IMG/VR virus record: IMGVR_UViG_3300032240_001991 | Span: 62,001-126,000 of that record | Direction: 5' to 3' (one strand) | Length of the DNA stretch: 64,000 nt | Shown: positions 4,108 through 63,928 of the stretch, piece after piece | How positions within the stretch are numbered: the first letter of the stretch is position 1 | Layout of the letters: each line of letters begins with the position of its first letter | The notes under the pieces: model-generated | Databases searched by the model: none | Seen by the model: the letters and a program-made list of their open reading frames with translations, nothing else | What the model was told of the DNA's origin: nothing | Made by a program: the position numbers and the translations under genes

Positions 4108-4161
4108 TTCTCTTGCTCCTTGCTGTGTGTGCGGGTATTATACTAAGGTTTCACCAAAAAG

Positions 4162-4605: not shown

Positions 4606-4663
4606 TTTTCGCTCCTTTACACACTTGGGTTTTTCACACCAAGGGTGACGACTGTGAATATCG

Positions 4664-4867: not shown

Positions 4868-4922
4868 GGTCTACTCCTTGCTGTGTGTATGAGGCTATTA
4901 TACTATGGTTTTACCAGTACTG

Positions 4923-5513: not shown

Positions 5514-5543
5514 TAGCCCAGGGTCACATAACCCTGGCGCTCT

Positions 5544-5726: not shown

Positions 5727-5727
5727 G

Positions 5728-6591: not shown

Positions 6592-6644
6592 TAGGTCACC
6601 TCTGTATATTTAAGACTGTATTATACTGAATTTTTGGTAAAAAG

Positions 6645-7004
6645 TCAATCCATGCGTGAGCCAACACTGGCATCAAGCCCCTGGCTTTTCAGTACCTTAG
6701 CGAACGCATCAGCATAGGCTTCTTTGAGCTCCATGCTCTGATTGCCCTCGTGAACCCAGTATTGCAGCCCCGGCTGGCTGTAACTCTTTTGGAATCCCTG
6801 CTCAGTCAAGCGGCGTCCTACCCGGCTGTTGCTACGGACCCCACGGATATTGACCCAAGCAAACCCACAAGGGCCTCCGGGTACCGTCCACCGATGCTGG
6901 CCGTCAGTGACCACCATGGGTTGAGGATTAGCAGCCTGAAGAGCAGCCATGCCCTGACGGTGCGCTTCTGCAAGAACTTCGTCGATATTCTGTTCAGTTA
7001 CCAT
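6645..7004 (-). CDS. Conserved phage hypothetical protein (start refined to MVTEQ)
   Basis: GCAAGGAG RBS before ATG 7004; promoter 7033-7061. Confidence 0.75.
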   Translation of the reverse strand: MVTEQNIDEVLAEAHRQGMAALQAANPQPMVVTDGQHRWTVPGGPCGFAWVNIRGVRSNSRVGRRLTEQGFQKSYSQPGLQYWVHEGNQSMELKEAYADAFAKVLKSQGLDASVGSRMD

Positions 7005-7047
7005 GTATATGCTCCTTGCTGTCAGTGTGCGTATACTAGCACAGGTT

Positions 7048-7359
7048 TTACCAGCCGTCAACCGGTCGCAGTCCGCTGATTACTCCTGCTTGGCTTAGTG
7101 TATCTTTTACACGGTTAAGGGCAGAACCACTATGGCCCCCAACGTGCCAGGCATAGAGACCCTTGGGAGTTTCGTCTTCCTTCCAATCGTAGATAGTGGC
7201 CACAGTACCATCTGCATACCGTAGTACCCACCCTACCGTAATCTTGTCCCCGCCCATAACATCCGGAGGACCAAATATCGCTACCAGTTGATCATAGGTA
7301 GCAGTAACGTATCCCACAAGGCTAGTGCCGGTGCCTTCGGCGTCTTTAGTAAACTTCAT
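7048..7359 (-). CDS. Conserved phage hypothetical protein
   Basis: GCAAGGAG RBS; promoter 7386-7414; ATIYDWK...W.VGG motif. Confidence 0.75.
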   Translation of the reverse strand: MKFTKDAEGTGTSLVGYVTATYDQLVAIFGPPDVMGGDKITVGWVLRYADGTVATIYDWKEDETPKGLYAWHVGGHSGSALNRVKDTLSQAGVISGLRPVDGW

Positions 7360-7410
7360 CTGGATCTCCTTGCTAGTGTTCGCGTACTATAGCACAGGTT
7401 TTACCAAAAG

Positions 7411-7623
7411 TCAAACTTCGTTGGCGTCTACATCCAGTTCTGTTTCGTCTTGGACATAGTCATAGGCCGAGGTCAATTCTTGATCAAAATCCCATTCACT
7501 TGTTTCTGCACAGTAGTGAATGATGTCTGCGATAAGATCTGCCGGACGAGTATAATTCTCGTTATTAAGGAACATCTGGGCCACTCGACCCACTGCCTGC
7601 TGGCGAAAAGTAAGATAGGTCAT
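7411..7623 (-). CDS. Hypothetical early protein
   Basis: GAGGAG RBS; acidic C-terminus. Confidence 0.7.
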   Translation of the reverse strand: MTYLTFRQQAVGRVAQMFLNNENYTRPADLIADIIHYCAETSEWDFDQELTSAYDYVQDETELDVDANEV

Positions 7624-7647
7624 TATCGCTCCTCAAGTCAAACGTAG

Positions 7648-7672
7648 GGGGGTGCAGTTGCCTACACCCCCC
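7648..7672 (-). terminator. GC-rich stem-loop, probable terminator
   Basis: GGGGGTG-cagttgccta-CACCCCC immediately after the stop at 7679. Confidence 0.5.
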
Positions 7673-7678
7673 AGTGGA

Positions 7679-7882
7679 TTAGCCCACCAGCGCGTTGTTA
7701 CGCACGGTGTTGCTAACGCGGCCGTACAGCCCATCGGCCGCCTTCTCCGAGATCTCCTTGCGGAGACCGCCCGACGCCGTTCCGTTGCCGCTCAACATAC
7801 GCGCCACAGCACGGATGCTGCGGAACTTGTAGGTCAGGCCCGAGTTCGGAAAGGTCACATCGATCGTTACATTGCGCTTCAT
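7679..7882 (-). CDS. Small basic hypothetical protein
   Basis: AAGGAGAG RBS; promoter 7926-7954. Confidence 0.7.
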   Translation of the reverse strand: MKRNVTIDVTFPNSGLTYKFRSIRAVARMLSGNGTASGGLRKEISEKAADGLYGRVSNTVRNNALVG

Positions 7883-7969
7883 TTCAACTCTCCTTAAGTT
7901 ACTAGCACCTTGCTAGTATGTCGTTACTATAACACCGTCTAATGACTGTGTCAACCTTTTTTTACCAAA

Positions 7970-8614
7970 TCAGTGAGCGTAGTAGCCCACGTTCTCAACA
8001 CTCTCATCCCAACAGGCACGGCACGAGCCGCACTCATTGTCCTGGAAACGGCTTGGGCAATCATACCCATGCGCTTCGCTGTTCTTGTGCACGGTGCTGG
8101 TGTGCGTCCACCCCTTGGGCGGCTCAGCATCAATCATCTGTGCACTCATACGAATTACAAGGTTCTTAGGCCGAGTATACTGCCTTAGGAACTCTCGCAC
8201 AATACCAAACTCACGGGTAGGCAACCAATGGTCGATCCAGGGCGTCAATTCAGCCACGCGAGCAATCATCATAAGATGCTTCACGCTCTGCAGGTCCCCA
8301 CTGTCGTGCCAGCGAAAGTATTCTTCATTCTGCATCAATTTGACCATTGCACTGACCCACGAGTCCTCTGTAAGAGTGTCGTGTAGGGCTTCTACGAGCG
8401 TCGTGTAGCGGCGATCGTGAGCGGCCACTGTGCTCTTCCAAGTGTAAGCACCTTTGAGTGCGTAGCACTTAAAGCAGACGCTGCCCTCAACCAATCGTAG
8501 TTTGCTGCCAGTATGACATTTCTTAGCACTGAAGCCAAAACTCTTGCCTGGCATCTTAGAAGGCTCACTCAATCCTCCTACGAACTCTCCTGCTGCTGCC
8601 TTGGTCTTGAACAT
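7970..8614 (-). CDS. Gp88-like protein (Cys-rich)
   Basis: C..GSKL....SVC..CYA, FRWHDSGD, WLPTRE, C-terminal C.SC.ACW; typical of the mycobacteriophage gp88 family. Confidence 0.75.
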   Translation of the reverse strand: MFKTKAAAGEFVGGLSEPSKMPGKSFGFSAKKCHTGSKLRLVEGSVCFKCYALKGAYTWKSTVAAHDRRYTTLVEALHDTLTEDSWVSAMVKLMQNEEYFRWHDSGDLQSVKHLMMIARVAELTPWIDHWLPTREFGIVREFLRQYTRPKNLVIRMSAQMIDAEPPKGWTHTSTVHKNSEAHGYDCPSRFQDNECGSCRACWDESVENVGYYAH

Positions 8615-8671
8615 TTCTGCTCCTTGCTAGTGTTCGTGTACTATAACACAGGTTTTACCAAAGGTCAACCA

Positions 8672-8857
8672 CTAACTATTCCAAGGAACGGTTCTCACGG
8701 TAACGCCGTCCCTGTCTGTTTCATAGAGGCCGGCTTCGTGTATGATGTATTGATCTTGAAAATGATCAAACTCTAGATCTGCACGATCCTTGGCCTCCTC
8801 TTCGGTACAGTCCGGAAGATCTACTTCTACTTGGATACGCATCATGTACTTAGGCAT
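8672..8857 (-). CDS. Hypothetical early protein
   Basis: Small acidic ORF in the early cassette. Confidence 0.6.
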   Translation of the reverse strand: MPKYMMRIQVEVDLPDCTEEEAKDRADLEFDHFQDQYIIHEAGLYETDRDGVTVRTVPWNS

Positions 8858-8941
8858 TAGAACCCCTCAGGAAGATAGCCCGTAAGCCGCTCTATCGCTT
8901 CAACTAACGAAAACCCCATCTCTTTACGCATATTATTCTCC

Positions 8942-9295
8942 TTAATCAGAACTGTCAACATCGTTGATCTGACCGCAATGAACACACTCATAGCGATTGT
9001 AGCAACGTCCAAGATTCATCGTCCGCACCCACTCATGCCCAGAGCACTTCGCAGCAATGGCCTCAGTCACATAGCCATGTCCGTAGCAGTGACTACACGC
9101 ACAGGTGAAGTGTCTGTAGCGATGCCGATTCTCTGGAGTGTCAGGTCTACCGTGTAGACTGTAGGAGTTGAGACTGAGATTCCAACCACCATACCCACGA
9201 CACTTTGGGCACTCTACGATGTAATCATACAGAGGTTCCTTGCGCGAGAAGTCCACGAAGGCATCTGGATGATCTGGCGTAAGAAAGTCTGACAT
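8942..9295 (-). CDS. Zn-finger protein with DnaJ-type CxxCxGxG repeats
   Basis: CPKCRGYGG and CSHCYGHG plus CVHCG; GCAAGGAG RBS; promoter 9325-9352. Confidence 0.75.
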   Translation of the reverse strand: MSDFLTPDHPDAFVDFSRKEPLYDYIVECPKCRGYGGWNLSLNSYSLHGRPDTPENRHRYRHFTCACSHCYGHGYVTEAIAAKCSGHEWVRTMNLGRCYNRYECVHCGQINDVDSSD

Positions 9296-9348
9296 ATGTT
9301 ACTCCTTGCTCTAACTATGCGACTATTATAGCAGGTTTTACCAAAAAG

Positions 9349-9972
9349 TCAACCTTCGTATTCACCTTCTGGATCAATCCCATGTTTATTGAGATCGATC
9401 TCTAAATTCTCTTCATCATCCCCGTCCTCATCTTCATACTCTGCCTGCTCGCGTTCGTACTCTTCAATCTGCTCGGAGATACAGAAACGTTCGTCCAGTT
9501 CAGTAATCTGTTCACGGACCTGGTCAGCAGTCCATCCGCTATAGTCTACGGAATTATCTCCTTCACTGTTAGTAAAGGTTCCTGCAAATTGCATACCTTG
9601 TTCATGATAGTAGGCTTCAACTTCAAAGCCCTGCTTTACCATATACTCAAAGAAAGCAATAGGTGGCCCCCATGCACTGTCAAAGAAGAGTTCGATGAGA
9701 TCAACTTCTTCATTGATGATGCGGGCGTCAACATCCCACTTGATTCCCCAGTTCTTGCATTGCCAACTATACCAGTCTGGAGCACCGTACTTCTCAATGA
9801 ACTCAGTGGCTCGCTGCCCTTCCCATTCGGGCGAACAATATTCATGCAACTCTGCAGGGCAAGGCAAGAACTCGTTGAATAATCGGTCGGCCTTGACGCC
9901 AGTCTTGACTCGCAAGATCATAGCCGGGTCCTTGTGGGTAAAGGTCACGTGATTCGCGCACCAATTTGGCAT
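9349..9972 (-). CDS. DUF1281/YubB-like ferredoxin-fold protein
   Basis: MPNWCAN, DWYSWQCKNWGIKWD, FDSAWGPP, YYHEQG motifs. Confidence 0.85.
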   Translation of the reverse strand: MPNWCANHVTFTHKDPAMILRVKTGVKADRLFNEFLPCPAELHEYCSPEWEGQRATEFIEKYGAPDWYSWQCKNWGIKWDVDARIINEEVDLIELFFDSAWGPPIAFFEYMVKQGFEVEAYYHEQGMQFAGTFTNSEGDNSVDYSGWTADQVREQITELDERFCISEQIEEYEREQAEYEDEDGDDEENLEIDLNKHGIDPEGEYEG

Positions 9973-10025
9973 TTAAAATTCCTCTTGTTAGTGTCTGTGT
10001 ACTATAGCAGAGGTTTTACCAATTG

Positions 10026-10211
10026 TCAACCTCTCATTAGGTCAAAGATGCTTCGTTGTAGATCTGCCAGTTCATCATGCGGAACATAAAAGTCTGTTCT
10101 AGGATCCCAGTACTCGCCCTCTTTGGGATCATAGTACAAGACCCTGCCGTTGGGATACTGGAAGGGGCCTTCCAACCCCTTCCTGGGCCCATAGTCTTTA
10201 GAGAGGGCCAT
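10026..10211 (-). CDS. Conserved phage hypothetical protein (start refined to MALSK)
   Basis: GLEGPF.YPNGRVLYYDPKEGEYWDP.TD motif. Confidence 0.7.
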   Translation of the reverse strand: MALSKDYGPRKGLEGPFQYPNGRVLYYDPKEGEYWDPRTDFYVPHDELADLQRSIFDLMRG

Positions 10212-10362
10212 TGACGCGCCGGTCAAGTGCGGCACCCCAACCAGCAAAGGCTACCACCCATGCAATAGAAGCACTAGAGTCACCCAAATACCAGTTGATA
10301 AGAAAAAGAATCAGCGTTGATGCCACTAGGCCAAATTCAAGAAAAGTAAGATACCGTTTCAT
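10198..10362 (-). CDS. 54-aa two-TM membrane protein (not in the ORF track)
   Basis: Manual translation MKRYLTFLEFGLVASTLILFLINWYLGDSSASIAWVVAFAGWGAALDRRVNGPL; AAGGAG RBS. Confidence 0.6.
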   Translation of the reverse strand: MKRYLTFLEFGLVASTLILFLINWYLGDSSASIAWVVAFAGWGAALDRRVNGPL

Positions 10363-10448
10363 AAGAACTCCTTAAGAATGGCAGTTTTTTCTGTAGTGCT
10401 GCCAACTGCGGTCTATACTTATATAGCGCCTGTCCTCGCGCTTCCGGA

Positions 10449-10781
10449 TTAGGCTGCGTCGCGCAGGCGATAAATCACGCCCGTCGCAGTCTCCACAATG
10501 TCAACATCGCTGTTGGCAGCGTACCAGTCAAAGTTACGGACCTTGGTGCTGTCACGCTCCCAGTCGGTAGGACCTTCAACCTTGACCGCAAGCCACTTCT
10601 TGCGGATGTTGAAGAACACGCGACGTCCTGGGTAGACTTCGCGAACACGTTCAGCAAAGTGTTCACCGCCCTTGATGTAAGAGTCGGGCCAAAGCCGGCG
10701 GTTCTCGCGGCTCTTGTTGACGGCGTCCACGTAGGCGCCCACGCGATCAGATGCAAACCAGTTTTCAGTACGCTTGAACAT
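10449..10781 (-). CDS. Hypothetical early protein
   Basis: AAGGAG RBS; promoter 10821-10849. Confidence 0.75.
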   Translation of the reverse strand: MFKRTENWFASDRVGAYVDAVNKSRENRRLWPDSYIKGGEHFAERVREVYPGRRVFFNIRKKWLAVKVEGPTDWERDSTKVRNFDWYAANSDVDIVETATGVIYRLRDAA

Positions 10782-10857
10782 TTTTCGCTCCTTTTGCTAG
10801 CACCTTGCTAGCGTGCCAATACTATAACAAAGGTTTTACCAACTGTCAACCATTAAA

Positions 10858-11190
10858 AAAATGCATTCTCCCTGCTGGCGGTATTTTCCATTCACCACAA
10901 ACAATTATGTGGTATCCGCTGCCCAACACAGGGAGACTGTCGTGCTGCTAACGCCCGTTTGGTTTGACGGCAGTATTGCTACTGGAGACCATTGACCACT
11001 CACCTTGCGGTGGATAGGCTGTTCTCAAACCACCCGTAGATGTCACTCTACTTCTATCGTGCGGGTCACACTAGCCGCTAACTAGGCGGCGTGTTCAGTA
11101 AAGATTGGTTGGAAAGATTCGTCAAAATCTATCTTCGCCAGTTGACGCTGACCGCCCAAACCTGGGCGCCAATCTTAAATCGTTTAACTT
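10858..11190 (-). ncRNA. Candidate large structured ncRNA A (about 330 nt), family not recognised
   Basis: No ORF of 60 aa or more in 10782-11234; own promoter 11197-11225; at least eight helices including two GCAA tetraloop hairpins; ends in a U-tract. Confidence 0.65.
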
Positions 11191-11234
11191 GGGTCTAGCA
11201 TAACAATTTTACCAAACCCTGTCAACCAAATTGT

Positions 11235-11480
11235 TTACTCTTCTACCGCAATGACAGAATCCTTGCGGAAACTGCGCCATCCGGCCTTTTCCACATCCCA
11301 AACGCTGACCACATCGGGATTAGGAACTCGAGCCTGCCCCGTGCCAGTGCTGGGCGGCAAACGGCTTTCCTGCAGAGTGCAACGAAGATTCCGTACTGTG
11401 CCATCGCTCTTAGTAAAGCGAACAGTACGCTCACCCAAACGTAGGTCATTCAGCAACTGATCAAAATTGATCTTAGTCAT
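11235..11480 (-). CDS. DUF2693/WYL_2-like SH3 beta-barrel protein
   Basis: V.FTKSDGTVRNLRCTL...VWDVEKAGWRSFR motif; AAGGAG RBS; promoter 11505-11533. Confidence 0.75.
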   Translation of the reverse strand: MTKINFDQLLNDLRLGERTVRFTKSDGTVRNLRCTLQESRLPPSTGTGQARVPNPDVVSVWDVEKAGWRSFRKDSVIAVEE

Positions 11481-11539
11481 ATAGATACTCCTTATTGAGC
11501 CGCCACTATAGCATCAAGAGGGCCTGCTGTCAATTTCTT

Positions 11540-11875
11540 CTTAATTGGGAGTGGGGGTGGACCCCATGTGGTTCCTGAGCAGGTGTCTGTTGACGCGCCC
11601 AGACAAGATTCTGCTCATATATAAGAGTGTGGAGCCGCTGGCTATGGGTGTACCGCGGCTCCCTCCACGACTTTCTGGGATCGAAATCCGCCCTAGACCT
11701 CTGATGTGGGTAGTCGTCTCAGCATTATCGCACCCGGTACACAAGATCTTCCTAATCTTCCGCCGGACTGTTATCCAGCCCGCAACTATGTTGACCAGTT
11801 AGGTCCGGACCTACCCTAGCGATTATCAGCATCCTAGGTCAGCTTTGGACTTCACTTTCTGCTTGGAGTTTTAAC
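11540..11875 (-). ncRNA. Candidate large structured ncRNA B (about 335 nt), family not recognised
   Basis: Starts just after TAAATA (11881-11886); nine or more helices, a UUCG loop, a 7-8 bp pseudoknot; only RBS-less shadow ORFs overlap it. Confidence 0.6.
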
Positions 11876-11892
11876 AAAAGTATTTAACCAGT

Positions 11893-11976
11893 TGGTGCGA
11901 GTGGAGGGATTCGAACCCTCAAGCCGTTGGGCGGCAGATTTTAAGTCTGCTGTGTATACCGTTCCACCACACTCGC
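11893..11976 (-). tRNA. trnL: tRNA-Leu(UAA)
   Basis: GCGAGTG acceptor, anticodon arm GCAGA-CTTAAAA-TCTGC, long variable arm, GGTTCGAATCC T-arm, encoded CCA. Confidence 0.97.
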
Positions 11977-12012
11977 ATATCATACAGTAATTATATATTC
12001 TAAATCTAAATA

Positions 12013-12147: not shown

Positions 12148-12223
12148 TGGTGGGCCCTCAGGGATTCGAACCCTGAACCAAAGGATTATGAGTCCTCTGC
12201 TCTAACCGTTGAGCTAAAGGCCC
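12148..12223 (-). tRNA. trnI: tRNA with CAU anticodon, probably tRNA-Ile2 (lysidine type) rather than Met
   Basis: 76 nt, GGGCCTT/GAGGCCC-like acceptor ending GGGCCCACCA, anticodon arm GAGGA-CTCATAA-TCCTT, encoded CCA; lacks the initiator GGG/CCC anticodon stem and 1:72 mismatch. Confidence 0.9.
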
Positions 12224-52979: not shown

Positions 52980-55298
52980 ATGAAGATACAAGTAACAAAA
53001 AGATCGGGGCTAAAAGAATCACTGACCGTTGAAAAATGGCAAGCGCAAATTGCAAAAATCTGCAAAGGCATTCCAGATGTTAGCCAGTCAATGATTGAAA
53101 TCAAAGCACAACCACATTTTTATGATGGGATTACTACAAGAGAGATTGACGAAATAACTTTACGTGCTATTGTTGATCTCATTGACGTTGAAGGTAATCC
53201 GGACATTGGCAATGTAAACTACCAGTATGTAGCAGGCAAGCAACGCCTTTCTATGTTAAGAAAGGATGTATACGGACAGTATCAGCCTCCTCATCTATAT
53301 GAAATTGTTAAGAAGAATGTAAGCGTTGGGTTATATACTCCAGACCTGCTTAAATGGTATACCGAAGAAGAATGGAACAAGATGGAGGAAATGATTGATC
53401 ATGAAAAAGATGAACAATACTCATACGCCGCCATTGAGCAAATGATTGAAAAGTATCTTGTAAAAAATCGTAGCACCAAGGCAATTTATGAAACACCGCA
53501 AATTCGTTACATGGTCGCAGCTGCCACAGTTTTTCATAAAGAAGAACCCCTGTCTGCAAGAATGCGATACGTTAAAGAGTATTATAATGCTGCTAGTGAT
53601 GGTTTGTTTACACTCGCTACTCCCGTTCTTGCTGGTTTGGGTACTCCTACTAAACAGTTCTCTTCCTGTGTTCTCATCCGATCCGATGACGACCTTGATT
53701 CCATATTTGCGTCCGGAGAAATGATGGCCAAGTACGCTAGTAAGCGTGCTGGTATTGGTCTTGAAATTGGTCGCCTTAGGCCATTAGGTAGTCCTATTCG
53801 TGGCGGAGAAATCATGCACACAGGCATGATTCCTTTTTTAAAGAAGTGGTTTGGTGATCTGCGCAGTTGCAGTCAAGGCGGTATTCGTAATGCTAGCGCA
53901 ACTGTATTCTATCCAATTTGGCATCATCAATTTGATGACCTCATCGTATTGAAGAATAATCAGGGTACTGAAGAAACTCGTGTACGACATATGGACTATG
54001 GTGTTGTACTTTCTGCTTTCTTTTGGCGTCGATTTAAGAACAAAGAAAATATAACTTTCTTTGATCCAAATGAAGTTCCAGATTTATACGAAGCTTTTTA
54101 CAAGAATACTGCAAAGTTTGAAGAGCTTTACGTCAAGTATGAAAAGCGAAAAGATTTACGTAAAAAGGTAATGAGCGCCGAGGAAGTGTTTAAGAGCGGT
54201 GTTCTAAAGGAACGTACAGACACTGGTCGAATTTATCTTGTATTCATTGATAACGTACAGAATCAAGGACCATTTGATCCAGAGTATCACACAATCTATC
54301 AAAGTAACCTTTGTTTAGAAATTCTTTTACCAACTAAGCCGTTTAAGCGTTTAGATGATCCTAACGGTCGTATTGCTTTATGCACATTAGGTTCAATCAA
54401 CTGGGGTGCGTTCCGTAATCCAGAAGACATGCGTCGTGCTTGTCGCATACTTCAGCGTAGCCTTTGCAATATTCTTGACTATCAAGATTTCTTAAGCATT
54501 CAAAGTCAATTAAGCAATAATGAAATTCAACCACTTGGTGTTGGTGTTACTAATCTTGCCTATTGGCATGCTAAGAGAAGTCTAAAGTATGGTGAGGCAG
54601 ATTCATTACAAGAAGTTAAATCTTGGATGGAACATCAGGCTTACTATCTAACTGAAGCAACAGTAGAACTAGCCAAAGAAAGAGGTAAGTGTCTCGACAG
54701 CGATAAGACTCGTTATGGTCAAGGTATCTTTCCTTGGGAGCTTCGCGCTAAAGGAGCAGACGAACTTGCCAATTTTACACCAGAATTAGACTGGGAGCCT
54801 TTGCGTGAACAAATGAAGACCTACGGTGTTCGTAATGCAACTCTAATGGCCATTGCGCCAGTAGAAAGTTCTAGTGTAGTAATTAATAGTACTAATGGTA
54901 TTGAAATGCCTATGAGTTTAATTACTGTAAAAGAAAGTAAAGCAGGATCGTTTACACAGGTTGTTCCTGAATATGCTAAACTTAAAAACAAGTATGAACT
55001 TATGTGGGATCAAAAAGATTGCACTGGTTACCTTAAAACTGCTGCTGTATTAGCTGCTTATGTGGACCAAAGCATCAGCACAAATACTTTTTATAATCCT
55101 GCACATTTTCTAGAACGTAAAGTACCTACTACTTTAATTGCTAAAAATCTTATGCAAGCACAGTTATGGGGATTGAAAACATTCTATTACAGCCTTATTA
55201 ACAAACAAGGTAGCAAAGCAGCTGAATCACCAGTTGACGCACCATTAGAAGCAATCAATTTTGATGAGGATTCTGATTGCGAAAGTTGCAAACTCTAG
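52980..55298 (+). CDS. nrdA: Ribonucleotide reductase class Ia, alpha subunit
   Basis: ATP-cone VTKRSG; TPVLAG, QFSSCVL, SCSQGGIR.AS, SNLCLEI, MAIAPVESSS, KTFYY, C-terminal CESCKL. Confidence 0.98.
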   Translation: MKIQVTKRSGLKESLTVEKWQAQIAKICKGIPDVSQSMIEIKAQPHFYDGITTREIDEITLRAIVDLIDVEGNPDIGNVNYQYVAGKQRLSMLRKDVYGQYQPPHLYEIVKKNVSVGLYTPDLLKWYTEEEWNKMEEMIDHEKDEQYSYAAIEQMIEKYLVKNRSTKAIYETPQIRYMVAAATVFHKEEPLSARMRYVKEYYNAASDGLFTLATPVLAGLGTPTKQFSSCVLIRSDDDLDSIFASGEMMAKYASKRAGIGLEIGRLRPLGSPIRGGEIMHTGMIPFLKKWFGDLRSCSQGGIRNASATVFYPIWHHQFDDLIVLKNNQGTEETRVRHMDYGVVLSAFFWRRFKNKENITFFDPNEVPDLYEAFYKNTAKFEELYVKYEKRKDLRKKVMSAEEVFKSGVLKERTDTGRIYLVFIDNVQNQGPFDPEYHTIYQSNLCLEILLPTKPFKRLDDPNGRIALCTLGSINWGAFRNPEDMRRACRILQRSLCNILDYQDFLSIQSQLSNNEIQPLGVGVTNLAYWHAKRSLKYGEADSLQEVKSWMEHQAYYLTEATVELAKERGKCLDSDKTRYGQGIFPWELRAKGADELANFTPELDWEPLREQMKTYGVRNATLMAIAPVESSSVVINSTNGIEMPMSLITVKESKAGSFTQVVPEYAKLKNKYELMWDQKDCTGYLKTAAVLAAYVDQSISTNTFYNPAHFLERKVPTTLIAKNLMQAQLWGLKTFYYSLINKQGSKAAESPVDAPLEAINFDEDSDCESCKL

Positions 55299-55310
55299 TA
55301 AAATAACATT

Positions 55311-56423
55311 ATGTCTAAACAACAATATAATTTAACAATTAAAACAGACTATTTGAATCGTAAGATGTTTCTAGATCCTGCGGGTCCAGTTACTATTCAG
55401 AGATTTGAAGAAGTCAAATATAAAAAAATCGCAGACTTTGAACAAACTGCAAGAGGTTTCTTTTGGGTACCAGAAGAAATTAGTTTAACCAAAGACGCGC
55501 AGGATTTTAAAGATGCTAGCGAAGCTATTCGCCACATCTTTACCAGTAATTTATTACGCCAGACCGCGTTGGATAGTTTGCAAGGTCGTGGGCCTAGTCA
55601 AATCTTTACACCGGTTGTTTCATTGCCCGAGTTAGAGGCTTTGGTCTATAACTGGACTTTCTTTGAGACAAACATTCACAGTCGTAGTTATAGTCATATT
55701 ATTCGTAATATCTATAATGTACCTAAAGATGTGTTTAATACTATTCATGATACACAACCAATTGTTAACATGGCCAGTAGTGTTGGCAAATATTATGATG
55801 ACTTGCATAGATTGAATTGTCTAAAAGAAATTGCTGACCCTACAAAAGAAACAGTATTAGAACCGGCACACATTAAAGCAATCTATCTAGCACTACACGC
55901 TAGCTATGCATTAGAAGCATTCCGTTTTATGGTATCTTTTGCTACTAGTCTTGCTATGGTAGAGAATAAAATCTTTATTGGTAACGGAAATATCATTAGT
56001 CTAATTCTTCAAGACGAAATTCTGCATAAAGGTTGGACTGCGTATATTATTAATCAAGTGGTTAAAGAAGACGCTCGATTTGCTAAGGCAGCTCAGGAAT
56101 GCCAAAACGAAGTTATTGAAATTTATAAAGATGTTATTCGTGAAGAAAAAGAATGGGCAGATTACTTGTTTATAAAAGGCCCAGTAATTGGGCTCAATGC
56201 TAACATCCTGCGAGACTTTGTTGACTACACTGCTGCTAGCGCACTTAAAGATATTGGAATTAAGTATTGGGATGTTTCTCCAAAGTCTACACCTATTCCT
56301 TGGTTTAACAAACATCAAGATACACATAAGAAGCAAACAGCATTACAGGAAAACGAATCAACAAATTATGTGATCGGAGTAATGTCTGATACATTAGACT
56401 ACGACGCATTGCCAACTTTATAA
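55311..56423 (+). CDS. nrdB: Ribonucleotide reductase class Ia, beta subunit
   Basis: FFWVPEEI, QTALDS, ETNIHSRSYSHI, EAFRF, QDEILH, ALQE.E..NY. Confidence 0.98.
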   Translation: MSKQQYNLTIKTDYLNRKMFLDPAGPVTIQRFEEVKYKKIADFEQTARGFFWVPEEISLTKDAQDFKDASEAIRHIFTSNLLRQTALDSLQGRGPSQIFTPVVSLPELEALVYNWTFFETNIHSRSYSHIIRNIYNVPKDVFNTIHDTQPIVNMASSVGKYYDDLHRLNCLKEIADPTKETVLEPAHIKAIYLALHASYALEAFRFMVSFATSLAMVENKIFIGNGNIISLILQDEILHKGWTAYIINQVVKEDARFAKAAQECQNEVIEIYKDVIREEKEWADYLFIKGPVIGLNANILRDFVDYTAASALKDIGIKYWDVSPKSTPIPWFNKHQDTHKKQTALQENESTNYVIGVMSDTLDYDALPTL

Positions 56424-59139: not shown

Positions 59140-59234
59140 GATCTAGAAGGGAGTAAACTTGCGTAGCGAGTTGTTATAGTGAAAGGCTATAAGTCTAAAC
59201 GAAGGAAAAACAAGGCCCTTTGGAGTTCGTTAGG
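59140..59234 (+). ncRNA. Candidate structured RNA upstream of tmRNA
   Basis: After TAAATA 59129-59134; two hairpins plus crossing pairings GAAGGG/CCCTTT and CTAAACGAA/TTCGTTAG. Confidence 0.4.
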
Positions 59235-59263
59235 TTGACAACATTCCTAAATTGTTGTATAGT
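59235..59263 (+). promoter_or_regulatory. sigma70 promoter of tmRNA
   Basis: TTGACA-17 nt-TATAGT. Confidence 0.8.
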
Positions 59264-59269
59264 TTTTTT

Positions 59270-59600
59270 AATGGTAGTAAACTTTTAGCTAAAGGTGTTT
59301 TGGACGGGGGTGCGATTCCCCCCACCTCCACCAAAAGCATATGACTCTGGATACTGTGGTGCACATACGGTTCCTGAACATTAGGATAATAGGTAGTCCT
59401 AGTATGCTTTTGATGGGGGTGACCAGTTTCGACAGAGCAAGTAATAACCTGAAGGCTACCAGTGAGGCGACTGACTTAATCAGCGCAAAAACTATAAACG
59501 CAAACGATGACGTTTATGCTATGGAGCTTGCTGCTTAATTGCAGAGTTAGCATACCAGAGCTAACCACTTGTTAACAGAACGGTTAAGTAGGGGGAGTAA
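59270..59600 (+). ncRNA. ssrA: Permuted (two-piece) tmRNA: acceptor piece about 59270-59333, intervening segment 59334-59414, coding piece 59415-about 59590; tag ANDDVYAMELAA
   Basis: T-arm GGGGG-TGCGATT-CCCCC and CACCTCC-A-CCA come before the 5' GGGGGTG..TTTCGAC; G3:U70 pair; resume codon GCA at 59500, stop at 59536-59538. Confidence 0.93.
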
Positions 59601-59620
59601 AATCTCCCTATTTTATATTT
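59589..59620 (+). terminator. Terminator after tmRNA
   Basis: TAGGGGGAG-taaaa-TCTCCCTA followed by TTTTATATTT. Confidence 0.7.
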
Positions 59621-59625
59621 AGACA

Positions 59626-60258
59626 ATGAGAGAAATAATGAAAATTAAAGATAAATTGTATCCTAATGGTTCACCATACGAAAATGCAGAAATTTTACCG
59701 TACGATACACAGCATTTTCTTAATTATCCAACAGCATTAGTGCAAGGTATACAAACTATTCTTCCAAAAAGAATTATAGAAGTTGGATCATGGAAAGGTC
59801 ACTCTGCTAACTACATGGCAAAAGTTTGCCTACAATATACAGACAATTTTGAAATTGTTTGTATTGATACTTTTCTAGGTTCTGCTGAACATTATACACA
59901 TCCTGATCACTCAAAGGGATTACCTAGAAAAAATAATCTTACTAACCTGTTAAGTACTTTTCTTTCTAATACTATTCAAGAAAATAATACCAAATATATT
60001 ACTCCATTCCCTGTTGATTCAAATACTGGATTTCTTGTATTAAAAGAATGGGGATACCTTGCAGATTTAATCTACATTGACGGATCGCATGATTATAGAT
60101 CGGTCACTATTGACATTATGAACTACAGACAACTTGTAAGACGAGGAGGGGTTATGATCTTTGACGATTACCTGCATCCTCCTACAGGATATGCAATTGA
60201 CGATAATCTTAGCGGCGGTCAGGTGATTGACGGAAAATACTTTTGGGTTAATAACTAG
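59626..60258 (+). CDS. Class I SAM methyltransferase (Methyltransf_24-like)
   Basis: IIEVGSWKGHS, VCIDTF.GS, LIYIDGSH.Y, GGVMIFDDY. Confidence 0.88.
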   Translation: MREIMKIKDKLYPNGSPYENAEILPYDTQHFLNYPTALVQGIQTILPKRIIEVGSWKGHSANYMAKVCLQYTDNFEIVCIDTFLGSAEHYTHPDHSKGLPRKNNLTNLLSTFLSNTIQENNTKYITPFPVDSNTGFLVLKEWGYLADLIYIDGSHDYRSVTIDIMNYRQLVRRGGVMIFDDYLHPPTGYAIDDNLSGGQVIDGKYFWVNN

Positions 60259-61260: not shown

Positions 61261-61812
61261 GTGAATATGGCTAGTAAGAAACAAAAAAAGGTTCCAATGA
61301 ATGTAGTCTTCAAGACTCGTGTTCATGACGAATCAGTTGAAGGACCAAATCCTTATCGTTGGCAAGATGTTACCAGCAAGGATCTTTTTAAGGGTAAGCG
61401 AGTAGTGCTGTTTGCACTCCCGGGCGCCTTTACACCAACTTGCAGTAACTATCAGCTGCCTACCTACGAAAAGCTCTATAAGGATTTTCAGAAGGCAGGA
61501 GTAGATGATATCTATTGCTTGAGCGTTAACGACGCTTTTGTTATGTTCCAGTGGGGCAAAGCACAGAAGGTTAAGAACGTTAAGCTTATCCCAGACGGAA
61601 GTGGATCTTTTACTGACAAGATGGGTATGCTTGTTAAGAAGGATAACTTGGGTTTTGGTAAGCGTAGCTGGCGCTATGCTATGGTCGTTAATGACGGTGT
61701 AATTGAAGAGATGTTTGTTGAACCAGGTAAGAAACATAATATGGACACAGATCCTTACGAAGTTTCAAATCCTGAAACTGTTCTTCGATATCTTTTGAAT
61801 AACGCAGCGTAA
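61261..61812 (+). CDS. Peroxiredoxin (Prx5/Redoxin type)
   Basis: LFALPGAFTPTCS, SVNDAFVM..WG, PDG.G.FT..MG, RSWRYAMVV.DG. Confidence 0.95.
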   Translation: MNMASKKQKKVPMNVVFKTRVHDESVEGPNPYRWQDVTSKDLFKGKRVVLFALPGAFTPTCSNYQLPTYEKLYKDFQKAGVDDIYCLSVNDAFVMFQWGKAQKVKNVKLIPDGSGSFTDKMGMLVKKDNLGFGKRSWRYAMVVNDGVIEEMFVEPGKKHNMDTDPYEVSNPETVLRYLLNNAA

Positions 61813-61813
61813 T

Positions 61814-62059
61814 ATGAAAGGTGTTTCTACTTTACAGGACCTTAAACCTATGCTAGAGAATGCAGGATTTAAAGTTACGTCGGGCGGTTGGTATGTAACA
61901 ACTGTTCACGGAAATTGGGGAATTGCACACGGTGAAGTTTATCTAAACAATGTTCCAATTAAAACTATAGCAGAAGCACCTATTCCCAAGCAGACTAAAA
62001 AGGCTGCTAAAAAGAAGACGGCTAAAAAGAAAGCCGCTAAAAAGAAAACCAAAAAATAA
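61814..62059 (+). CDS. Small protein with a Lys/Ala-rich histone-like tail
   Basis: C-terminal KKAAKKKTAKKKAAKKKTKK. Confidence 0.7.
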   Translation: MKGVSTLQDLKPMLENAGFKVTSGGWYVTTVHGNWGIAHGEVYLNNVPIKTIAEAPIPKQTKKAAKKKTAKKKAAKKKTKK

Positions 62060-62063
62060 CTTT

Positions 62064-62086
62064 AGGGCTCGTTTGGGCCCTTTTTT
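62064..62086 (+). terminator. Rho-independent terminator
   Basis: AGGGCTC-gttt-GGGCCCT followed by a T run. Confidence 0.8.
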
Positions 62087-62088
62087 GG

Positions 62089-62116
62089 TTGCATCTTTTG
62101 GTAAAACCTGTATAAT
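62089..62116 (+). promoter_or_regulatory. Early promoter with GGTAAAACC box (TAAATA late element follows)
   Basis: TTGCAT-cttttGGTAAAACCtg-TATAAT; TAAATA at about 62128. Confidence 0.75.
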
Positions 62117-62151
62117 AATACTTGTGATAAATATTCAAAAGGGTTAGACTT

Positions 62152-62373
62152 ATGAAGTTAGGTGAAATTGTTAACTTTTATCAGACCGCGTCAGACGATG
62201 CTCTCTTAGAACATGTTGAACAGAATAACGACACCGGTCTTTCTTCAACAGATGTAGTTAAGATTATTCGTACGGGCAATGATCCCGGTGCATGGAGCGA
62301 GCCAATGACTGGAGATCAGTTATCAGAATATCTAGTTCAATTAGTAGGAACTCCAAAGAATGTCCAAAAATAA
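62152..62373 (+). CDS. Small acidic protein, possible partner/antitoxin of the YafQ-like RNase
   Basis: 73 aa, acidic, 14-bp overlap with the downstream RelE-fold gene. Confidence 0.55.
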   Translation: MKLGEIVNFYQTASDDALLEHVEQNNDTGLSSTDVVKIIRTGNDPGAWSEPMTGDQLSEYLVQLVGTPKNVQK

Positions 62374-62785
62374 AGGCAAACAACAACCTGTTGTTGCGCC
62401 TCCTACTGCGGCAAAGGCAGTTTTTAAGATTTGTGATCTTTTTGCTTCAACATTCAAAGAAAAAACTCAAGTTGATAGTTCTTTATTAGAAAAATTTGAA
62501 AACTTTAAAAAAACTAAAGAGAATGATCCGTTAGCTAGGTTTGGGGGCAGCGATAGATTATTTGTTTCTGGTGCTCCTTTAAGAAATGCTATACCTGGCG
62601 AAAATTTAGGTCATGCTCATTTAACACAAGACCTTAGCGTTGTTTATTCAATATCCGGAAAAAATCCCACTATTGTTAAACTTTACGGAGTATTCACTCA
62701 CGCAGAGTTAGGCACTGGCACACCGCCAAAGATTAAAACACAGCAGCAGATGGCTAAGACATTTTCTAACCAAAGATTCACTTAA
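62360..62785 (+). CDS. YafQ/RelE-family mRNA interferase-like protein
   Basis: GHAHLTQDLSVVYSI...LYGVFTHAELG aligns with YafQ RDAHVEPDWILIYKL...ERTGTHAALFG. Confidence 0.68.
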   Translation: MSKNKGKQQPVVAPPTAAKAVFKICDLFASTFKEKTQVDSSLLEKFENFKKTKENDPLARFGGSDRLFVSGAPLRNAIPGENLGHAHLTQDLSVVYSISGKNPTIVKLYGVFTHAELGTGTPPKIKTQQQMAKTFSNQRFT

Positions 62786-62790
62786 CAGAA

Positions 62791-62819
62791 TTGACTTCTA
62801 CTAAATAGAACTGTATAAT
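62791..62819 (+). promoter_or_regulatory. sigma70 promoter (with internal TAAATA) of the NAD-salvage operon
   Basis: TTGACT-tctacTAAATAgaactg(17)-TATAAT. Confidence 0.8.
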
Positions 62820-62828
62820 ATTATACAT

Positions 62829-62870
62829 AGAGCAGGGTAGACCAGCTCTTACAACAACAGGAGTAGATCC
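62829..62870 (+). promoter_or_regulatory. Twin GUAGA-loop RNA hairpin leader, copy 1
   Basis: AGAGC-A-GG[GTAGA]CC-A-GCTCT...GGA[GTAGA]TCC, 2 nt before the ATG. Confidence 0.8.
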
Positions 62871-62872
62871 AT

Positions 62873-63928
62873 ATGAAAAATAAATCCCAAGGGTGGACTG
62901 ACCGCGGCATTGAACCAAGACAGTACGACTTAGCAGTCGTAATTGGTCGATTCCAACCTTTCCACAATGCCCACGAAAAACTAATTGAACATGCCAAACA
63001 GCATAGTAAAGATGTATTGGTTCTGATTGGTAGTTCGTTTATTGCCCGCAACATTAAGAACCCGTTTACCTATGACGAACGTGTTGCTATGTTGCCAGAT
63101 GATGTAGTAGCTGCGCCAATTGAAGACGAACTTTATAATGACCAGCACTGGGTTGCTCGAGTACAGCAGCAGATTGAAGAAGAGTTGCACAATGTTTATG
63201 GCAATGTCTCTGATCGAACTGTTTGTATTGTTGGGCATGAGAAAGACGACAGTAGCCAATACTTGCGGTGGTTCCCGCAATATGACTTTGTAGAAGTGCC
63301 TAGTTTTGCTACATTAGACAGCACTAAGATCCGAGACATTCTGTTTGGAAGTGAAATGATTCCAGCGGATGTTATGCCTGAGCGTGTACAGGCCTTTATC
63401 AAGGCTTGGTGTATCAGTAACGAAGAGATTTATTTTAATCTCTGCGCCGAGCACAAGTTTATTAAAGACTATAAGCAGATGTGGAGCGCAGCACCATTTC
63501 AGCCTGTGTTTGTTACAACCGATGCTGTAGTTATTTGCCAAGGACACATCCTGCTTATTAAGCGTCGTATGGCGCCAGGTAAGGGTCTGTGGGCATTGCC
63601 CGGCGGATTTCTTGGACCAAATGAAAAAATTGAAGATTCTATGATTCGTGAACTAGAAGAAGAAACTCGTATCCGTGTTAACCGAGACATGCTACTCGCA
63701 TGTACTAAAGGATCACATGTGTTTGACCATCCTCGCCGCAGCGAACGTGGCAGGACAATTACTCATGCTTATCTGGTCGTACTGCAAGAACGAACTCTTC
63801 CTAAAGTGCGCGGATCAGATGATGCTGAGAGGGCGAAGTGGGTCCCGCTTTCTGAGTTTTATGATATGACGGACCAAATGTATGAAGATCATTATTCAAT
63901 CGCCACATACATGATTAATCGAGCCTAA
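62873..63928 (+). CDS. nadM: Bifunctional NMN adenylyltransferase / ADP-ribose pyrophosphatase (NadM-Nudix)
   Basis: IGRFQPFHNAH (HxxH), KNPFTYDER, LDSTKIR; Nudix box GLWALPGGF...E...RELEEET; RGSDDA. Confidence 0.95.
   Translation: MKNKSQGWTDRGIEPRQYDLAVVIGRFQPFHNAHEKLIEHAKQHSKDVLVLIGSSFIARNIKNPFTYDERVAMLPDDVVAAPIEDELYNDQHWVARVQQQIEEELHNVYGNVSDRTVCIVGHEKDDSSQYLRWFPQYDFVEVPSFATLDSTKIRDILFGSEMIPADVMPERVQAFIKAWCISNEEIYFNLCAEHKFIKDYKQMWSAAPFQPVFVTTDAVVICQGHILLIKRRMAPGKGLWALPGGFLGPNEKIEDSMIRELEEETRIRVNRDMLLACTKGSHVFDHPRRSERGRTITHAYLVVLQERTLPKVRGSDDAERAKWVPLSEFYDMTDQMYEDHYSIATYMINRA

What the first reader, a model, noticed from the sequence alone, without database searches (positions are those of the whole stretch)
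59270..59600. Phage-encoded circularly permuted two-piece tmRNA with a long structured intervening segment
Seen: the acceptor piece (about 64 nt, ending CCA at 59333) precedes the coding piece (from 59415). The acceptor stem has G3:U70. Inter-piece helices are CAGAGCA/TGTTTTG and CTACC/GGTAG. The tag is ANDDVYAMELAA. The 81-nt intervening segment is closed by AAAAGCATA/TATGCTTTT and has an internal TAGGA/TCCTA hairpin. Known: two-piece tmRNA occurs in alphaproteobacteria, some Rhodocyclales betaproteobacteria and some cyanobacteria, and a C-terminal LAA is a ClpXP degron. Inference: it points to an alpha- or betaproteobacterial host, rescues ribosomes stalled by host or phage RNases, and the excised segment may be a small RNA of its own.
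Basis: partly seen in the sequence, partly recalled or inferred. Interest (0 to 1): 0.72.

Follow-up and report, generated by a model that had tools for sequence, protein, structure and literature searches.

The report
Giant-phage two-piece tmRNA, modular spacer
A giant freshwater phage carries its own complete ribosome-rescue RNA (tmRNA) gene in the known "two-piece" form, which is ordinary for such phages; the new point is that the spacer cut out during maturation is a conserved unit shuffled between phage tmRNA genes, so it may be a small RNA with its own job.

Summary
ARAGORN calls a permuted tmRNA (59241-59629, tag ANDDVYAMELAA). Rfam gives tmRNA_permuted 148 bits and beta_tmRNA 131 bits. 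The window lies in a 327-kb T4-like giant phage record (31 tRNAs, no SmpB found) from fresh water.

Phage two-piece tmRNAs are already published, and I found hundreds in viral contigs, so the gene is a new member of a known kind.

The "long structured intervening segment" (IVS) is only partly as described:
- The closing stem is real and covaries across 217 viral IVSs, so it is a class feature.
- The inner hairpins are not thermodynamically special.

The IVS interior behaves as a module:
- It is 93-95% identical to that of L408/L409, whose backbones are only 26-77% identical.
- The closest backbones (L121, L133, L204) carry unrelated IVSs, and L204's IVS is a full abiF antitoxin RNA motif.
- The module occurs only inside tmRNA genes: 8 of 8 metagenome hits and all 8 tmRNA-context hits of two viral scans (3 others were chance ORF matches).
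- Its hairpin loop keeps a self-complementary hexamer through paired changes.

The host is probably a proteobacterium; alpha versus beta cannot be decided. Function and processing are inferred, not shown.

The parts
59235..59263 (+). sigma-70-type promoter, TTGACA - 17 nt - TATAGT. The transcript would start at about 59270-59272.
   Evidence: It matches 11 of 12 consensus positions. A TTGACA/-10-like pair sits at the same place in relatives L103 and L369. The Rfam beta_tmRNA model includes this region and aligns it.
59271..59333 (+). Acceptor piece of about 63 nt. It contains GGUAG 59273-59277, UGUUUUG 59296-59302, the T-arm 59306-59322 (GGGGG / UGCGAUU / CCCCC), the acceptor 3' strand 59323-59329, A73 at 59330 and CCA at 59331-59333.
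   Evidence: The 5' end is inferred from the promoter, not measured.
59334..59414 (+). Intervening segment (IVS) of 81 nt, predicted to form a three-way junction and to be removed during maturation.
   Evidence: No Rfam family matches it at E <= 10.
59332..59412 (+). IVS closing stem P1: 59332-59341 pairs with 59403-59412. It sequesters C75 and A76 and stacks on the acceptor stem.
   Evidence: Class-wide covariation: cognate IVS ends form a helix of median 10 bp against 4 bp for non-cognate ends, over 217 unique IVSs. Compensatory G-C to A-U changes occur among carriers of the same module.
59346..59377 (+). IVS hairpin P2. Stems are 59346-59347/59376-59377, 59349-59351/59372-59374 and 59353-59358/59366-59371. 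The loop is 59359-59365.
   Evidence: The stem sequence is invariant in 7 distinct carriers while the loop varies.
59359..59364 (+). Self-complementary loop hexamer GUGCAC, a candidate loop-loop (kissing) dimerisation site.
   Evidence: All three loop variants at this position (GUGCAC, GUCGAC, CGGCCG) are self-complementary and differ by paired double changes.
59380..59403 (+). IVS hairpin P3 (59380-59387 / 59396-59403).
   Evidence: Two compensatory pairs (A-U to G-C). The upper pairs are broken in subtype 2.
59415..59615 (+). Coding piece. It contains the acceptor 5' strand 59415-59421, GUUUCGAC 59426-59433, CAGAGCA 59432-59438, CUACC 59456-59460, the PK1 hairpin 59460-59463/59470-59473 and the 3' hairpin 59562-59566/59582-59586.
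59500..59538 (+). Tag reading frame. The resume codon GCA is 59500-59502, the peptide is ANDDVYAMELAA and the TAA stop is 59536-59538.
59586..59620 (+). Intrinsic terminator: a hairpin at 59586-59613 followed by a U-run.

Best explanation
This is a complete, self-contained gene for a two-piece (circularly permuted) tmRNA, carried by a T4-like giant phage of at least 327 kb.

Inferred mechanism:
1. Host RNA polymerase transcribes a precursor of about 345 nt, from a near-consensus sigma-70 promoter to an intrinsic terminator.
2. The precursor folds so that the acceptor strands, the IVS closing stem and two long-range helices form.
3. Host RNase P cuts 5' of G59415, and host 3'-end enzymes expose CCA at 59333. 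This releases the 81-nt IVS.
4. The acceptor piece (about 63 nt) and the coding piece (about 200 nt) stay together by base pairing.
5. Host AlaRS charges the RNA through G3:U70. With host SmpB (none was found in the phage record) it enters stalled ribosomes and adds (A)ANDDVYAMELAA, whose C-terminal LAA is a ClpXP-type degron.

Shown: sequence and structure membership, the transcription signals, and conservation of the gene beside RNR genes in related phages. Inferred: processing, charging and tagging.

The gene belongs to a large, mainly virus-borne clade of beta-like permuted tmRNAs. In that clade the stem-closed IVS is standard, but its interior is an exchangeable module. The window's module is a conserved three-way junction with a palindromic loop. 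I think it more likely than not that this module is under selection of its own. It could be a released small RNA or a precursor-level element. What it does is unknown.
For: Gene identity:
- ARAGORN and Rfam both call it.
- Clade model scores are beta 130.6, alpha 95.1 and cyano 46 bits.
- Promoter and terminator are present.
- The precursor fold recovers all helices with z = -4.86.
- The acceptor stem covaries, with 3 pairs and G3:U70 kept, among 7 relatives.

Phage context:
- The record is a virus record with 31 tRNAs, a Gp23 capsid protein and a large terminase.
- Its nearest isolates are giant myoviruses.
- About 25 tmRNA contigs share neighbouring RNR genes at up to 85% amino-acid identity.

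IVS closing stem:
- Cognate ends form a helix of median 10 bp against 4 bp for non-cognate ends.

IVS modularity:
- Window against L408/L409: interior 93-95% identical, other segments 26-77%.
- L103 against L369: 1/81 IVS differences against 32/177 in the mature parts, p = 3.5e-5.
- All four backbone x IVS combinations exist.
- Class-wide correlation between backbone and IVS-interior identity is r = 0.06. Among pairs with backbones at least 95% identical, 38% have unrelated IVSs. Of the pairs with IVS interiors at least 90% identical, 24 have backbones under 75% identical.
- The sister gene L204 (backbone 91%/79% identical) has an abiF RNA in the slot (41.5 bits, cut-off 37).
- The module occurs only in tmRNA IVSs.
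- The palindromic loop is kept by paired changes.
Against: - There is no RNA evidence for this phage. Only the probable source DNA sample holds the sequence, and the RNA-library contigs come from relatives and could be DNA or unprocessed precursor.
- No SmpB is present in the 327 kb held, and the host is unknown, so compatibility with the host machinery is untested.
- The T-loop reads UGCGAUU, with G where tRNAs have U55. This is shared with L133, L121 and L204, and its effect is unknown.
- The IVS interior is not more stable than shuffles.
- P2 never varies, so it says nothing for or against the structure.
- Sharing of an IVS between backbones could be neutral patch recombination, because the IVS lies between the two most conserved stretches of the gene.
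Confidence: 0.8

Rival explanations
1. The IVS is only a folding and processing scaffold. The closing stem brings the two acceptor strands together and presents the ends to RNase P and the 3' trimming enzymes. The interior is neutral filler. Its patchy high identity reflects recent gene-conversion patches whose breakpoints fall in the highly conserved flanks (T-arm/CCA on one side, GGGG..GUUUCGAC on the other).
For: - The closing stem is the only class-wide covarying feature.
- Interiors of 111 IVS classes fold no better than shuffles (mean z = -0.21), and the window's interior gives z = -0.74.
- Interiors are hypervariable: 221 unique sequences fall into 157 clusters.
- 38% of pairs with backbones at least 95% identical have unrelated interiors.
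- Window against L103: the IVS is not significantly better conserved than the mature parts (p = 0.15).
Against: - Neutral filler should not keep an invariant 11-pair P2 stem and a loop hexamer that stays self-complementary through three paired changes.
- It should not stay 93-99% identical while the functional backbone falls to 26-83%.
- It should not contain a full abiF antitoxin motif in a sister gene.
Confidence: 0.4
2. The IVS is an anti-defence cargo. It would be a small RNA decoy, released by tRNA-end processing, that neutralises a host RNA-binding toxin or abortive-infection system, as an RNA antitoxin mimic does. The tmRNA gene would serve as its expression and processing vehicle.
For: - L204 and L410 carry the abiF RNA motif directly after the tmRNA CCA end.
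- The abiF RNA is an experimentally shown antitoxin that binds the AbiF toxin (PMC12373285).
- Phage RNA antitoxin mimicry has a precedent in pseudo-ToxI (PMC3475682).
- IVS hypervariability and exchange are typical of arms-race loci.
Against: - The window's own IVS matches no Rfam family at E <= 10.
- 14 further IVS classes show no known RNA.
- The window-type module was never found outside a tmRNA gene, for example next to a bacterial toxin gene, in viral or metagenome collections.
- Only 2 abiF cases were found.
Confidence: 0.25
3. The phage tmRNA does not tag proteins. It would act as a competitor or sensor that interferes with host trans-translation, like the CDS-less tmRNA-like RNA of mycobacteriophage DS6A.
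For: - No SmpB is present in the record.
- The T-loop is unusual, with G at position 55.
- An inhibitory phage form is reported (PMC11915505, citing earlier work).
Against: - The tag frame is intact, with the canonical resume context UAAAC-GCA-AAC-GAU and an LAA end.
- Relatives keep open tag frames of the ANDxxxALAA type despite sequence divergence, which indicates selection on the peptide.
Confidence: 0.1
4. The gene is host DNA: an ssrA fragment picked up by imprecise prophage excision, or a chimeric assembly.
For: - ssrA is a common integration site.
- The record contains a 25-kb block of about 50% GC at window 1-12000.
Against: - The gene is complete, with its own promoter and terminator.
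- It lies 47 kb from the GC shift, in sequence of about 38% GC like the rest of the phage.
- It is flanked by phage-type genes.
- It is syntenic with RNR genes in related viral contigs.
- A 40-kb contig in the source run covers it without a difference.
- The IVS base it carries is almost absent from 185,579 bacterial species genomes: 4 hits.
Confidence: 0.02

Closest known systems
Two-piece (permuted) tmRNA of Betaproteobacteria, Rfam RF01850
   Same: The model matches end to end (positions 1-331) at 130.6 bits, above the cut-off of 84. The order is the same: promoter, acceptor piece, CCA, IVS, coding piece. The long-range helices, the PK1 hairpin, the resume context and the AND...LAA tag also match.
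   Different: The IVS is 81 nt, where the model has about 30. The score is modest and the alpha model also passes at 95.1 bits. The gene is carried by a phage of 37% GC. I obtained no genuine betaproteobacterial gene for calibration.
Phage-encoded two-piece tmRNAs (OM43 phage Melnitz, pelagimyophages, cyanophages; PMC9004378)
   Same: Each is a complete permuted ssrA in a T4-like aquatic phage, placed behind an early-type promoter, with no phage SmpB reported. The proposed roles are ribosome maintenance or selective tagging.
   Different: Those genes are alpha- or cyano-type, and Melnitz has a glutamine riboswitch at its 3' end. Here the gene is beta-like, Rfam finds no riboswitch, and the host phage is a giant of at least 327 kb in the GAP32/PA5oct/Phosso group. 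The papers I could read do not describe IVS modularity.
abiF RNA (Rfam RF03085), the RNA antitoxin of AbiF (PMC12373285), and pseudo-ToxI of phage PhiTE (PMC3475682)
   Same: In the sister gene L204 the same slot holds a full abiF motif. The concept, a phage-made RNA that mimics an antitoxin, is established for ToxIN.
   Different: The window's IVS is not an abiF RNA. No toxin partner is known. The link is by position and analogy only.
Loop-loop kissing dimerisation hairpins, such as the HIV-1 DIS with its six-base palindromic loop (GCGCGC or GUGCAC; recalled from my own knowledge, not checked here)
   Same: A stable stem is capped by a loop whose first six bases are self-complementary and are followed by a purine. 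Variants keep the palindrome.
   Different: There is no homology, and dimerisation is not tested. The loop has 7 nt, not 9.

Membership tests
tmRNA (ssrA), permuted/two-piece form | A tRNA-like domain with a 7-bp acceptor stem, a T-arm, a discriminator base and an encoded CCA. | tested here: met
   The covariance models RF04321 (148.1 bits) and RF01850 (130.6 bits) align all of these pairs. I also read them directly. The T-loop has G at the position of U55.
tmRNA (ssrA), permuted/two-piece form | A G3:U70 wobble pair, the alanine identity element. | tested here: met
   G59417 pairs with U59327. The pair is kept in all 7 relatives while neighbouring pairs covary.
tmRNA (ssrA), permuted/two-piece form | Gene order is permuted: the 3' acceptor strand with CCA lies upstream of the 5' acceptor strand and the tag frame. 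| tested here: met
   CCA is at 59331-59333, the 5' strand is at 59415-59421 and the tag is at 59500-59538.
tmRNA (ssrA), permuted/two-piece form | A tag reading frame with an alanine resume codon, a stop codon and a hydrophobic C-terminus (..LAA). | tested here: met
   The tag is ANDDVYAMELAA*. The resume context aligns to the model.
tmRNA (ssrA), permuted/two-piece form | Pseudoknot PK1 upstream of the resume codon. | tested here: inconclusive
   The hairpin part (59460-59463 / 59470-59473) aligns to the model. The covariance model does not model the pseudoknot's second helix, and I did not establish it.
tmRNA (ssrA), permuted/two-piece form | The precursor is cut into two RNAs that stay paired. 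It is charged with Ala, binds SmpB and tags proteins. | not testable with these tools
   No RNA run holds this phage. No SmpB gene lies in the record.
Betaproteobacterial lineage of two-piece tmRNA | Descent from the betaproteobacterial permutation event, meaning a closer relation to those genes than to alpha or cyano genes. | tested here: inconclusive
   Model scores are beta 130.6, alpha 95.1 and cyano 46 bits. Genuine alpha genes score at most 72 bits on the beta model and 163-292 bits on the alpha model. No genuine beta gene was obtained, and no tree was made.
abiF RNA (RF03085) | A match to the abiF covariance model, a hairpin with the conserved loop GCCUCUCAnCGAUGC. | tested here: not met
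   The window's IVS has no match at E <= 10. The model is met only by relatives L204 (41.5 bits) and, by the loop motif, L410.
Known self-cleaving ribozymes and other Rfam RNAs, considered for the IVS | A match to any of the 4227 Rfam models. | tested here: not met
   The only hit is tmRNA_permuted itself, at E 6.6.

The most novel reading that the evidence does not exclude
In a large clade of virus-borne two-piece tmRNA genes, the intervening segment is an exchangeable cargo slot. The tRNA-end processing that matures the tmRNA also releases a small RNA. Different phages load the slot with different RNAs, including an abiF antitoxin mimic. The window's cargo is a so far undescribed three-way-junction RNA that dimerises through a palindromic loop and acts on a host or phage factor, most likely in defence or counter-defence.
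Probability: 0.3. Interest if true: 0.8.

Novelty: new variant of a known kind. Interest (0 to 1): 0.5.

Why it matters
The tmRNA gene itself adds little. Phage and huge-phage tmRNAs, including two-piece ones, are on record.

What could matter is the intervening segment. It is assumed to be thrown away, yet here it is the best-conserved part of the gene between some relatives. It is shuffled between tmRNA backbones, and in a sister gene it is an RNA antitoxin motif.

If the segment is a released functional RNA, then:
- Phage tmRNA genes would be dual-purpose loci, combining ribosome rescue with delivery of a small RNA.
- This would be a new place to look for RNA-based anti-defence factors.
- The hundreds of IVS classes in viral contigs would be a ready catalogue of candidates.

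The abiF case can be tested directly with existing AbiF toxin assays.

Tried and rejected
- **Protein-coding IVS.** The 65-aa ORF at 59341-59538 runs in frame into the tag. However, window/L103 differences fall 9/4/7 on codon positions 1/2/3, the ORF stops early in L103, and it has no ribosome-binding site. It is not coding (sequences; my own count).
- **Known RNA family or ribozyme in the window's IVS.** None at E <= 10. None in 14 other IVS classes either.
- **Thermodynamic support for the inner hairpins.** Absent.
- **Extra copies of the IVS module.** None elsewhere in the phage genome and none outside tmRNA genes.
- **Promoter as a repeated phage element.** There is only one copy in the record.
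- **Synteny with the tmRNA of the related phage Phosso.** None.
- **Nucleotide match in isolated phages.** None.
- **Calibration against genuine betaproteobacterial two-piece genes.** This failed. 151 and 401 sampled Pseudomonadota genomes gave none. The one hit, L412, was alpha-type, which shows that GUUUCGAC is not specific to the beta type.
- **Palindromic loops as a class-wide feature.** Not enriched: 48 observed against 56 expected.
- **RNA evidence.** RNA-library contigs matched only relatives.
- **One paper could not be read.** PMC516066 (Sharkady and Williams 2004) is not held. I could not check what was already said there about intervening segments.

Full report
**1. The observation**

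- The acceptor 3' strand CACCUCC is 59323-59329, A73 is 59330 and CCA is 59331-59333.
- The 5' strand GGGGGUG is 59415-59421, with G3:U70 at 59417:59327.
- The helices are UGUUUUG 59296-59302 / CAGAGCA 59432-59438 and GGUAG 59273-59277 / CUACC 59456-59460.
- The intervening segment (IVS) is 81 nt, 59334-59414. Its closing stem is 59333-59341 / 59403-59411 and its inner hairpin is UAGGA/UCCUA.
- The tag frame is 59500-59538.

The detectors agree. ARAGORN calls a permuted tmRNA at 59241-59629 with tag ANDDVYAMELAA. Rfam gives tmRNA_permuted 148.1 bits (cut-off 47) and beta_tmRNA 130.6 bits (cut-off 84), both matched over the full model. The 348-nt precursor folds into exactly these helices with z = -4.86. 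This is far beyond chance.

**2. What carries it**

The window is bases 62001-126000 of a 326,658-bp IMG/VR virus record.
- The record is about 37% GC, apart from one 25-kb block of about 50% GC. It has 31 tRNA genes and this single tmRNA.
- It encodes a T4-type Gp23 capsid protein (261.8 bits) and a large terminase.
- The nearest isolates are giant myoviruses of 286-490 kb: Vibrio phage 2.275.O and Sinorhizobium phage Phosso (capsid 70-71% identical), XaC1, GAP32 and PA5oct (terminase 54%). Their hosts are Gamma- or Alphaproteobacteria.
- The window holds tail-fibre, ligase, endolysin and RNR genes.
- Only the probable source sample holds the full sequence. Partial holders are nearly all freshwater metagenomes. 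A 40-kb contig in the source run covers the locus without a difference.
- No SmpB gene reaches the Pfam cut-off in the record.

**3. The gene as a unit**

- A TTGACA-17-TATAGT promoter at 59235-59263 matches 11 of 12 consensus positions. An intrinsic terminator at 59586-59613 plus a U-run brackets the gene.
- Relatives have a promoter at the same place.
- About 25 viral contigs with a permuted tmRNA also carry RNR genes beside it, at up to 85% amino-acid identity to the window's. The RNR-tmRNA neighbourhood is therefore conserved in related phages.

**4. How ordinary it is**

- Two-piece tmRNAs in phages are published. In 18,146 phage genomes, 53 of 133 unique phage tmRNAs were permuted, and they were mostly aquatic (PMC9004378).
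- tmRNAs in huge phages are published (PMC7162821).
- RF04321 is the merged alpha/beta/cyano model (PMC11915505).
ARAGORN finds a permuted tmRNA in 188 of 232 loci, mostly with tags ANDxxFALAA or ANDxxYALAA.
- Among the close isolates, Phosso also has a permuted tmRNA. It is alpha-type and unannotated, and its IVS of about 410 nt is so long that ARAGORN misses the gene. Four other relatives have none.

The gene as such is a new member of a known kind.

**5. Lineage and host**

- Model scores are beta 130.6, alpha 95.1 and cyano 46 bits.
- The viral relatives score 95-175 bits on the beta model.
- Genuine alphaproteobacterial genes score 163-292 bits on the alpha model and at most 72 bits on the beta model.
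- The IVS base CCA-AAAG...CUUUU-GAU-GGGG is found in more than 119 viral contigs but in only 4 of 185,579 bacterial species genomes.

The gene therefore belongs to a divergent, mainly virus-borne, beta-like clade. I could not obtain genuine betaproteobacterial references, so true membership of the beta lineage is unresolved. A proteobacterial host is likely from the phage's relatives. Alpha versus beta cannot be told, and the Melnitz case shows that the tmRNA type can disagree with the host class.

**6. The intervening segment: what holds and what does not**

- The closing stem is real but generic. In 217 unique viral IVSs, the cognate 5' and 3' ends form a helix of median 10 bp against 4 bp for non-cognate ends. 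There are 97 different stem sequences.
- The interior is not thermodynamically special. The whole IVS gives z = -1.82 and the interior gives z = -0.74. Over 111 IVS classes the mean z is -0.21.
- No Rfam family matches the window's IVS.
- The 65-aa ORF that starts in the IVS and runs into the tag frame is not coding (see the tried-and-rejected section).

**7. The intervening segment as a module**

The window-type interior was found only in permuted tmRNA genes:
- L103 and its three identical copies, L369/L371, and L408 and L409.
- All eight metagenome hits, including the new backbones L415 and L420.
- Two short contigs in other runs, with yet another backbone.

Segment identities show the decoupling:
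- Window against L408/L409: IVS interior 93-95%, T-arm/acceptor 77%, 5' acceptor and D region 62-68%, PK1 region 48-53%, tag 26-54%.
- L103 against L369: IVS 80/81 identical, mature parts 145/177 identical, Fisher p = 3.5e-5.
- Window against L103 is not significant (p = 0.15).

The groupings conflict:
- Acceptor type GGGGGUG is carried by the window, L103 and L420. Type GGGCCAG is carried by L408, L409 and L369.
- IVS subtype 1 is carried by the window, L408, L409 and L420. Subtype 2 is carried by L103, L369 and L415.
- All combinations exist, which requires recombination.

Conversely, the backbones nearest to the window carry unrelated IVSs:
- L121: acceptor piece 92%, coding part 71% identical.
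- L204: 91% and 79%.
- L133: 88% and 81%.

Class-wide, over 184 unique genes and 16,836 pairs:
- Backbone identity and IVS-interior identity are uncorrelated (r = 0.06).
- 38% of pairs with backbones at least 95% identical have unrelated interiors.
- 24 pairs share interiors at least 90% identical on backbones less than 75% identical.

**8. Structure of the window-type module**

The consensus fold of seven distinct sequences gives a three-way junction:
- The acceptor stem has 3 covarying pairs.
- P1 has 1 covarying pair. A second appeared in the five-sequence fold.
- P3 has 2 covarying pairs. Its upper pairs are broken in subtype 2.
- P2 has 11 pairs and is invariant.

The 7-nt P2 loop varies, but its first six bases are self-complementary in every variant: GUGCAC (window 59359-59364), GUCGAC and CGGCCG. 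These variants differ by paired double substitutions. Treating the two further variants as independent draws gives roughly (1/64)^2 by chance. Palindromic hexamers are not enriched in IVS interiors in general: 48 observed against 56 expected. The feature is therefore specific to this module. I read it as a candidate loop-loop dimerisation site. This is inference only.

**9. A lead from a sister gene**

- The IVS of L204 contains a full-length abiF RNA: RF03085, 41.5 bits against a cut-off of 37, local E 2.3e-6.
- L410 has the same loop motif right after its CCA end.
- A further class (L237-type) looks abiF-like by eye but did not score.
- The abiF motif is an experimentally shown RNA antitoxin that binds and neutralises the AbiF abortive-infection toxin (PMC12373285). 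It has also been noted in a cyanophage (PMC9964418).
- Phage RNA mimicry of an antitoxin is established for pseudo-ToxI (PMC3475682).
- I found no paper that links tmRNA intervening segments to such RNAs.

This makes a "cargo slot" reading plausible for the clade. For the window's own IVS, however, no partner or known family is in hand, and the module was never seen outside tmRNA genes.

**10. Verdict**

- The tmRNA identification is secure (about 0.97).
- Function in trans-translation with host factors is likely (about 0.75) but inferred.
- The host call is weak.
- The "structured IVS" reduces to a generic closing stem plus a conserved, recombining interior module. Its own function is possible (about 0.4-0.5 that it is selected, about 0.25-0.3 that it is a released effector RNA) and can be tested directly.

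Noticed in passing
L204:7339-7374 (+), inside the tmRNA at L204:7268-7504; also L410:701-742 (-): A full-length Rfam abiF RNA (the RNA antitoxin motif of AbiF abortive infection) sits in the intervening segment of a phage two-piece tmRNA. That tmRNA's backbone is 91%/79% identical to the window's. A second viral contig has the same loop motif directly after its CCA end.
   Followed up: partly
L359:1501-2103 (-), which is Sinorhizobium phage Phosso PV764938.1 349596-350198: This is an unannotated permuted tmRNA (RF04321 113 bits, alpha model 108 bits) with an intervening segment of about 410 nt. ARAGORN does not call it. What the long segment holds was not examined.
   Followed up: partly
window 1-12000 (record 50-75 kb): A 25-kb block of 47-50% GC lies in a phage of about 37% GC. 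All its genes are on the minus strand, including SPFH/Band 7, a GP88-like protein and a weak L7/L12 C-terminal match. It ends at tRNA-Leu(taa) 11893-11976 and tRNA-Met 12148-12223, and a tRNA-Lys lies at record 60487. It could be an acquired module or a structural block; this was not resolved.
   Followed up: partly
record 174-201 kb (outside the window): A cluster of 28 tRNA genes covers most amino acids. It includes a 95-nt tRNA-Ile(tat) at record 189920-190014 that is long enough to hold an insertion. Together with the tmRNA this is a large investment in translation.
   Followed up: no
window 59311-59317: The T-loop reads UGCGAUU, with G where tRNAs and most tmRNAs have U55. The variant is shared by L133, L121 and L204, so it is a lineage trait and not an error.
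   Followed up: partly
window 59341-59538: A 65-codon ORF starts in the IVS and reads in frame into the tag and its stop codon. Substitution pattern and relatives show it is not coding.
   Followed up: yes
window 59228-59265: An aquatic metatranscriptome contig (run X20, 287 nt) matches the promoter region with 1 difference and then continues into unrelated sequence. L132 matches the same upstream stretch at 96.7%. The promoter is not repeated in this phage's own record.
   Followed up: partly
window 52980-56423 and 61261-63928: Auxiliary metabolic genes surround the tmRNA: RNR large and small subunits, a SAM methyltransferase (59626-60258), a peroxiredoxin (61261-61812) and a cytidylyltransferase-like domain with a Nudix domain, which may be NAD-related (62873-63928).
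   Followed up: no
whole record: CheckV rates the 327-kb record as 36% complete, which would imply a genome near 900 kb. The nearest isolates are 286-490 kb, so the estimate looks doubtful.
   Followed up: no
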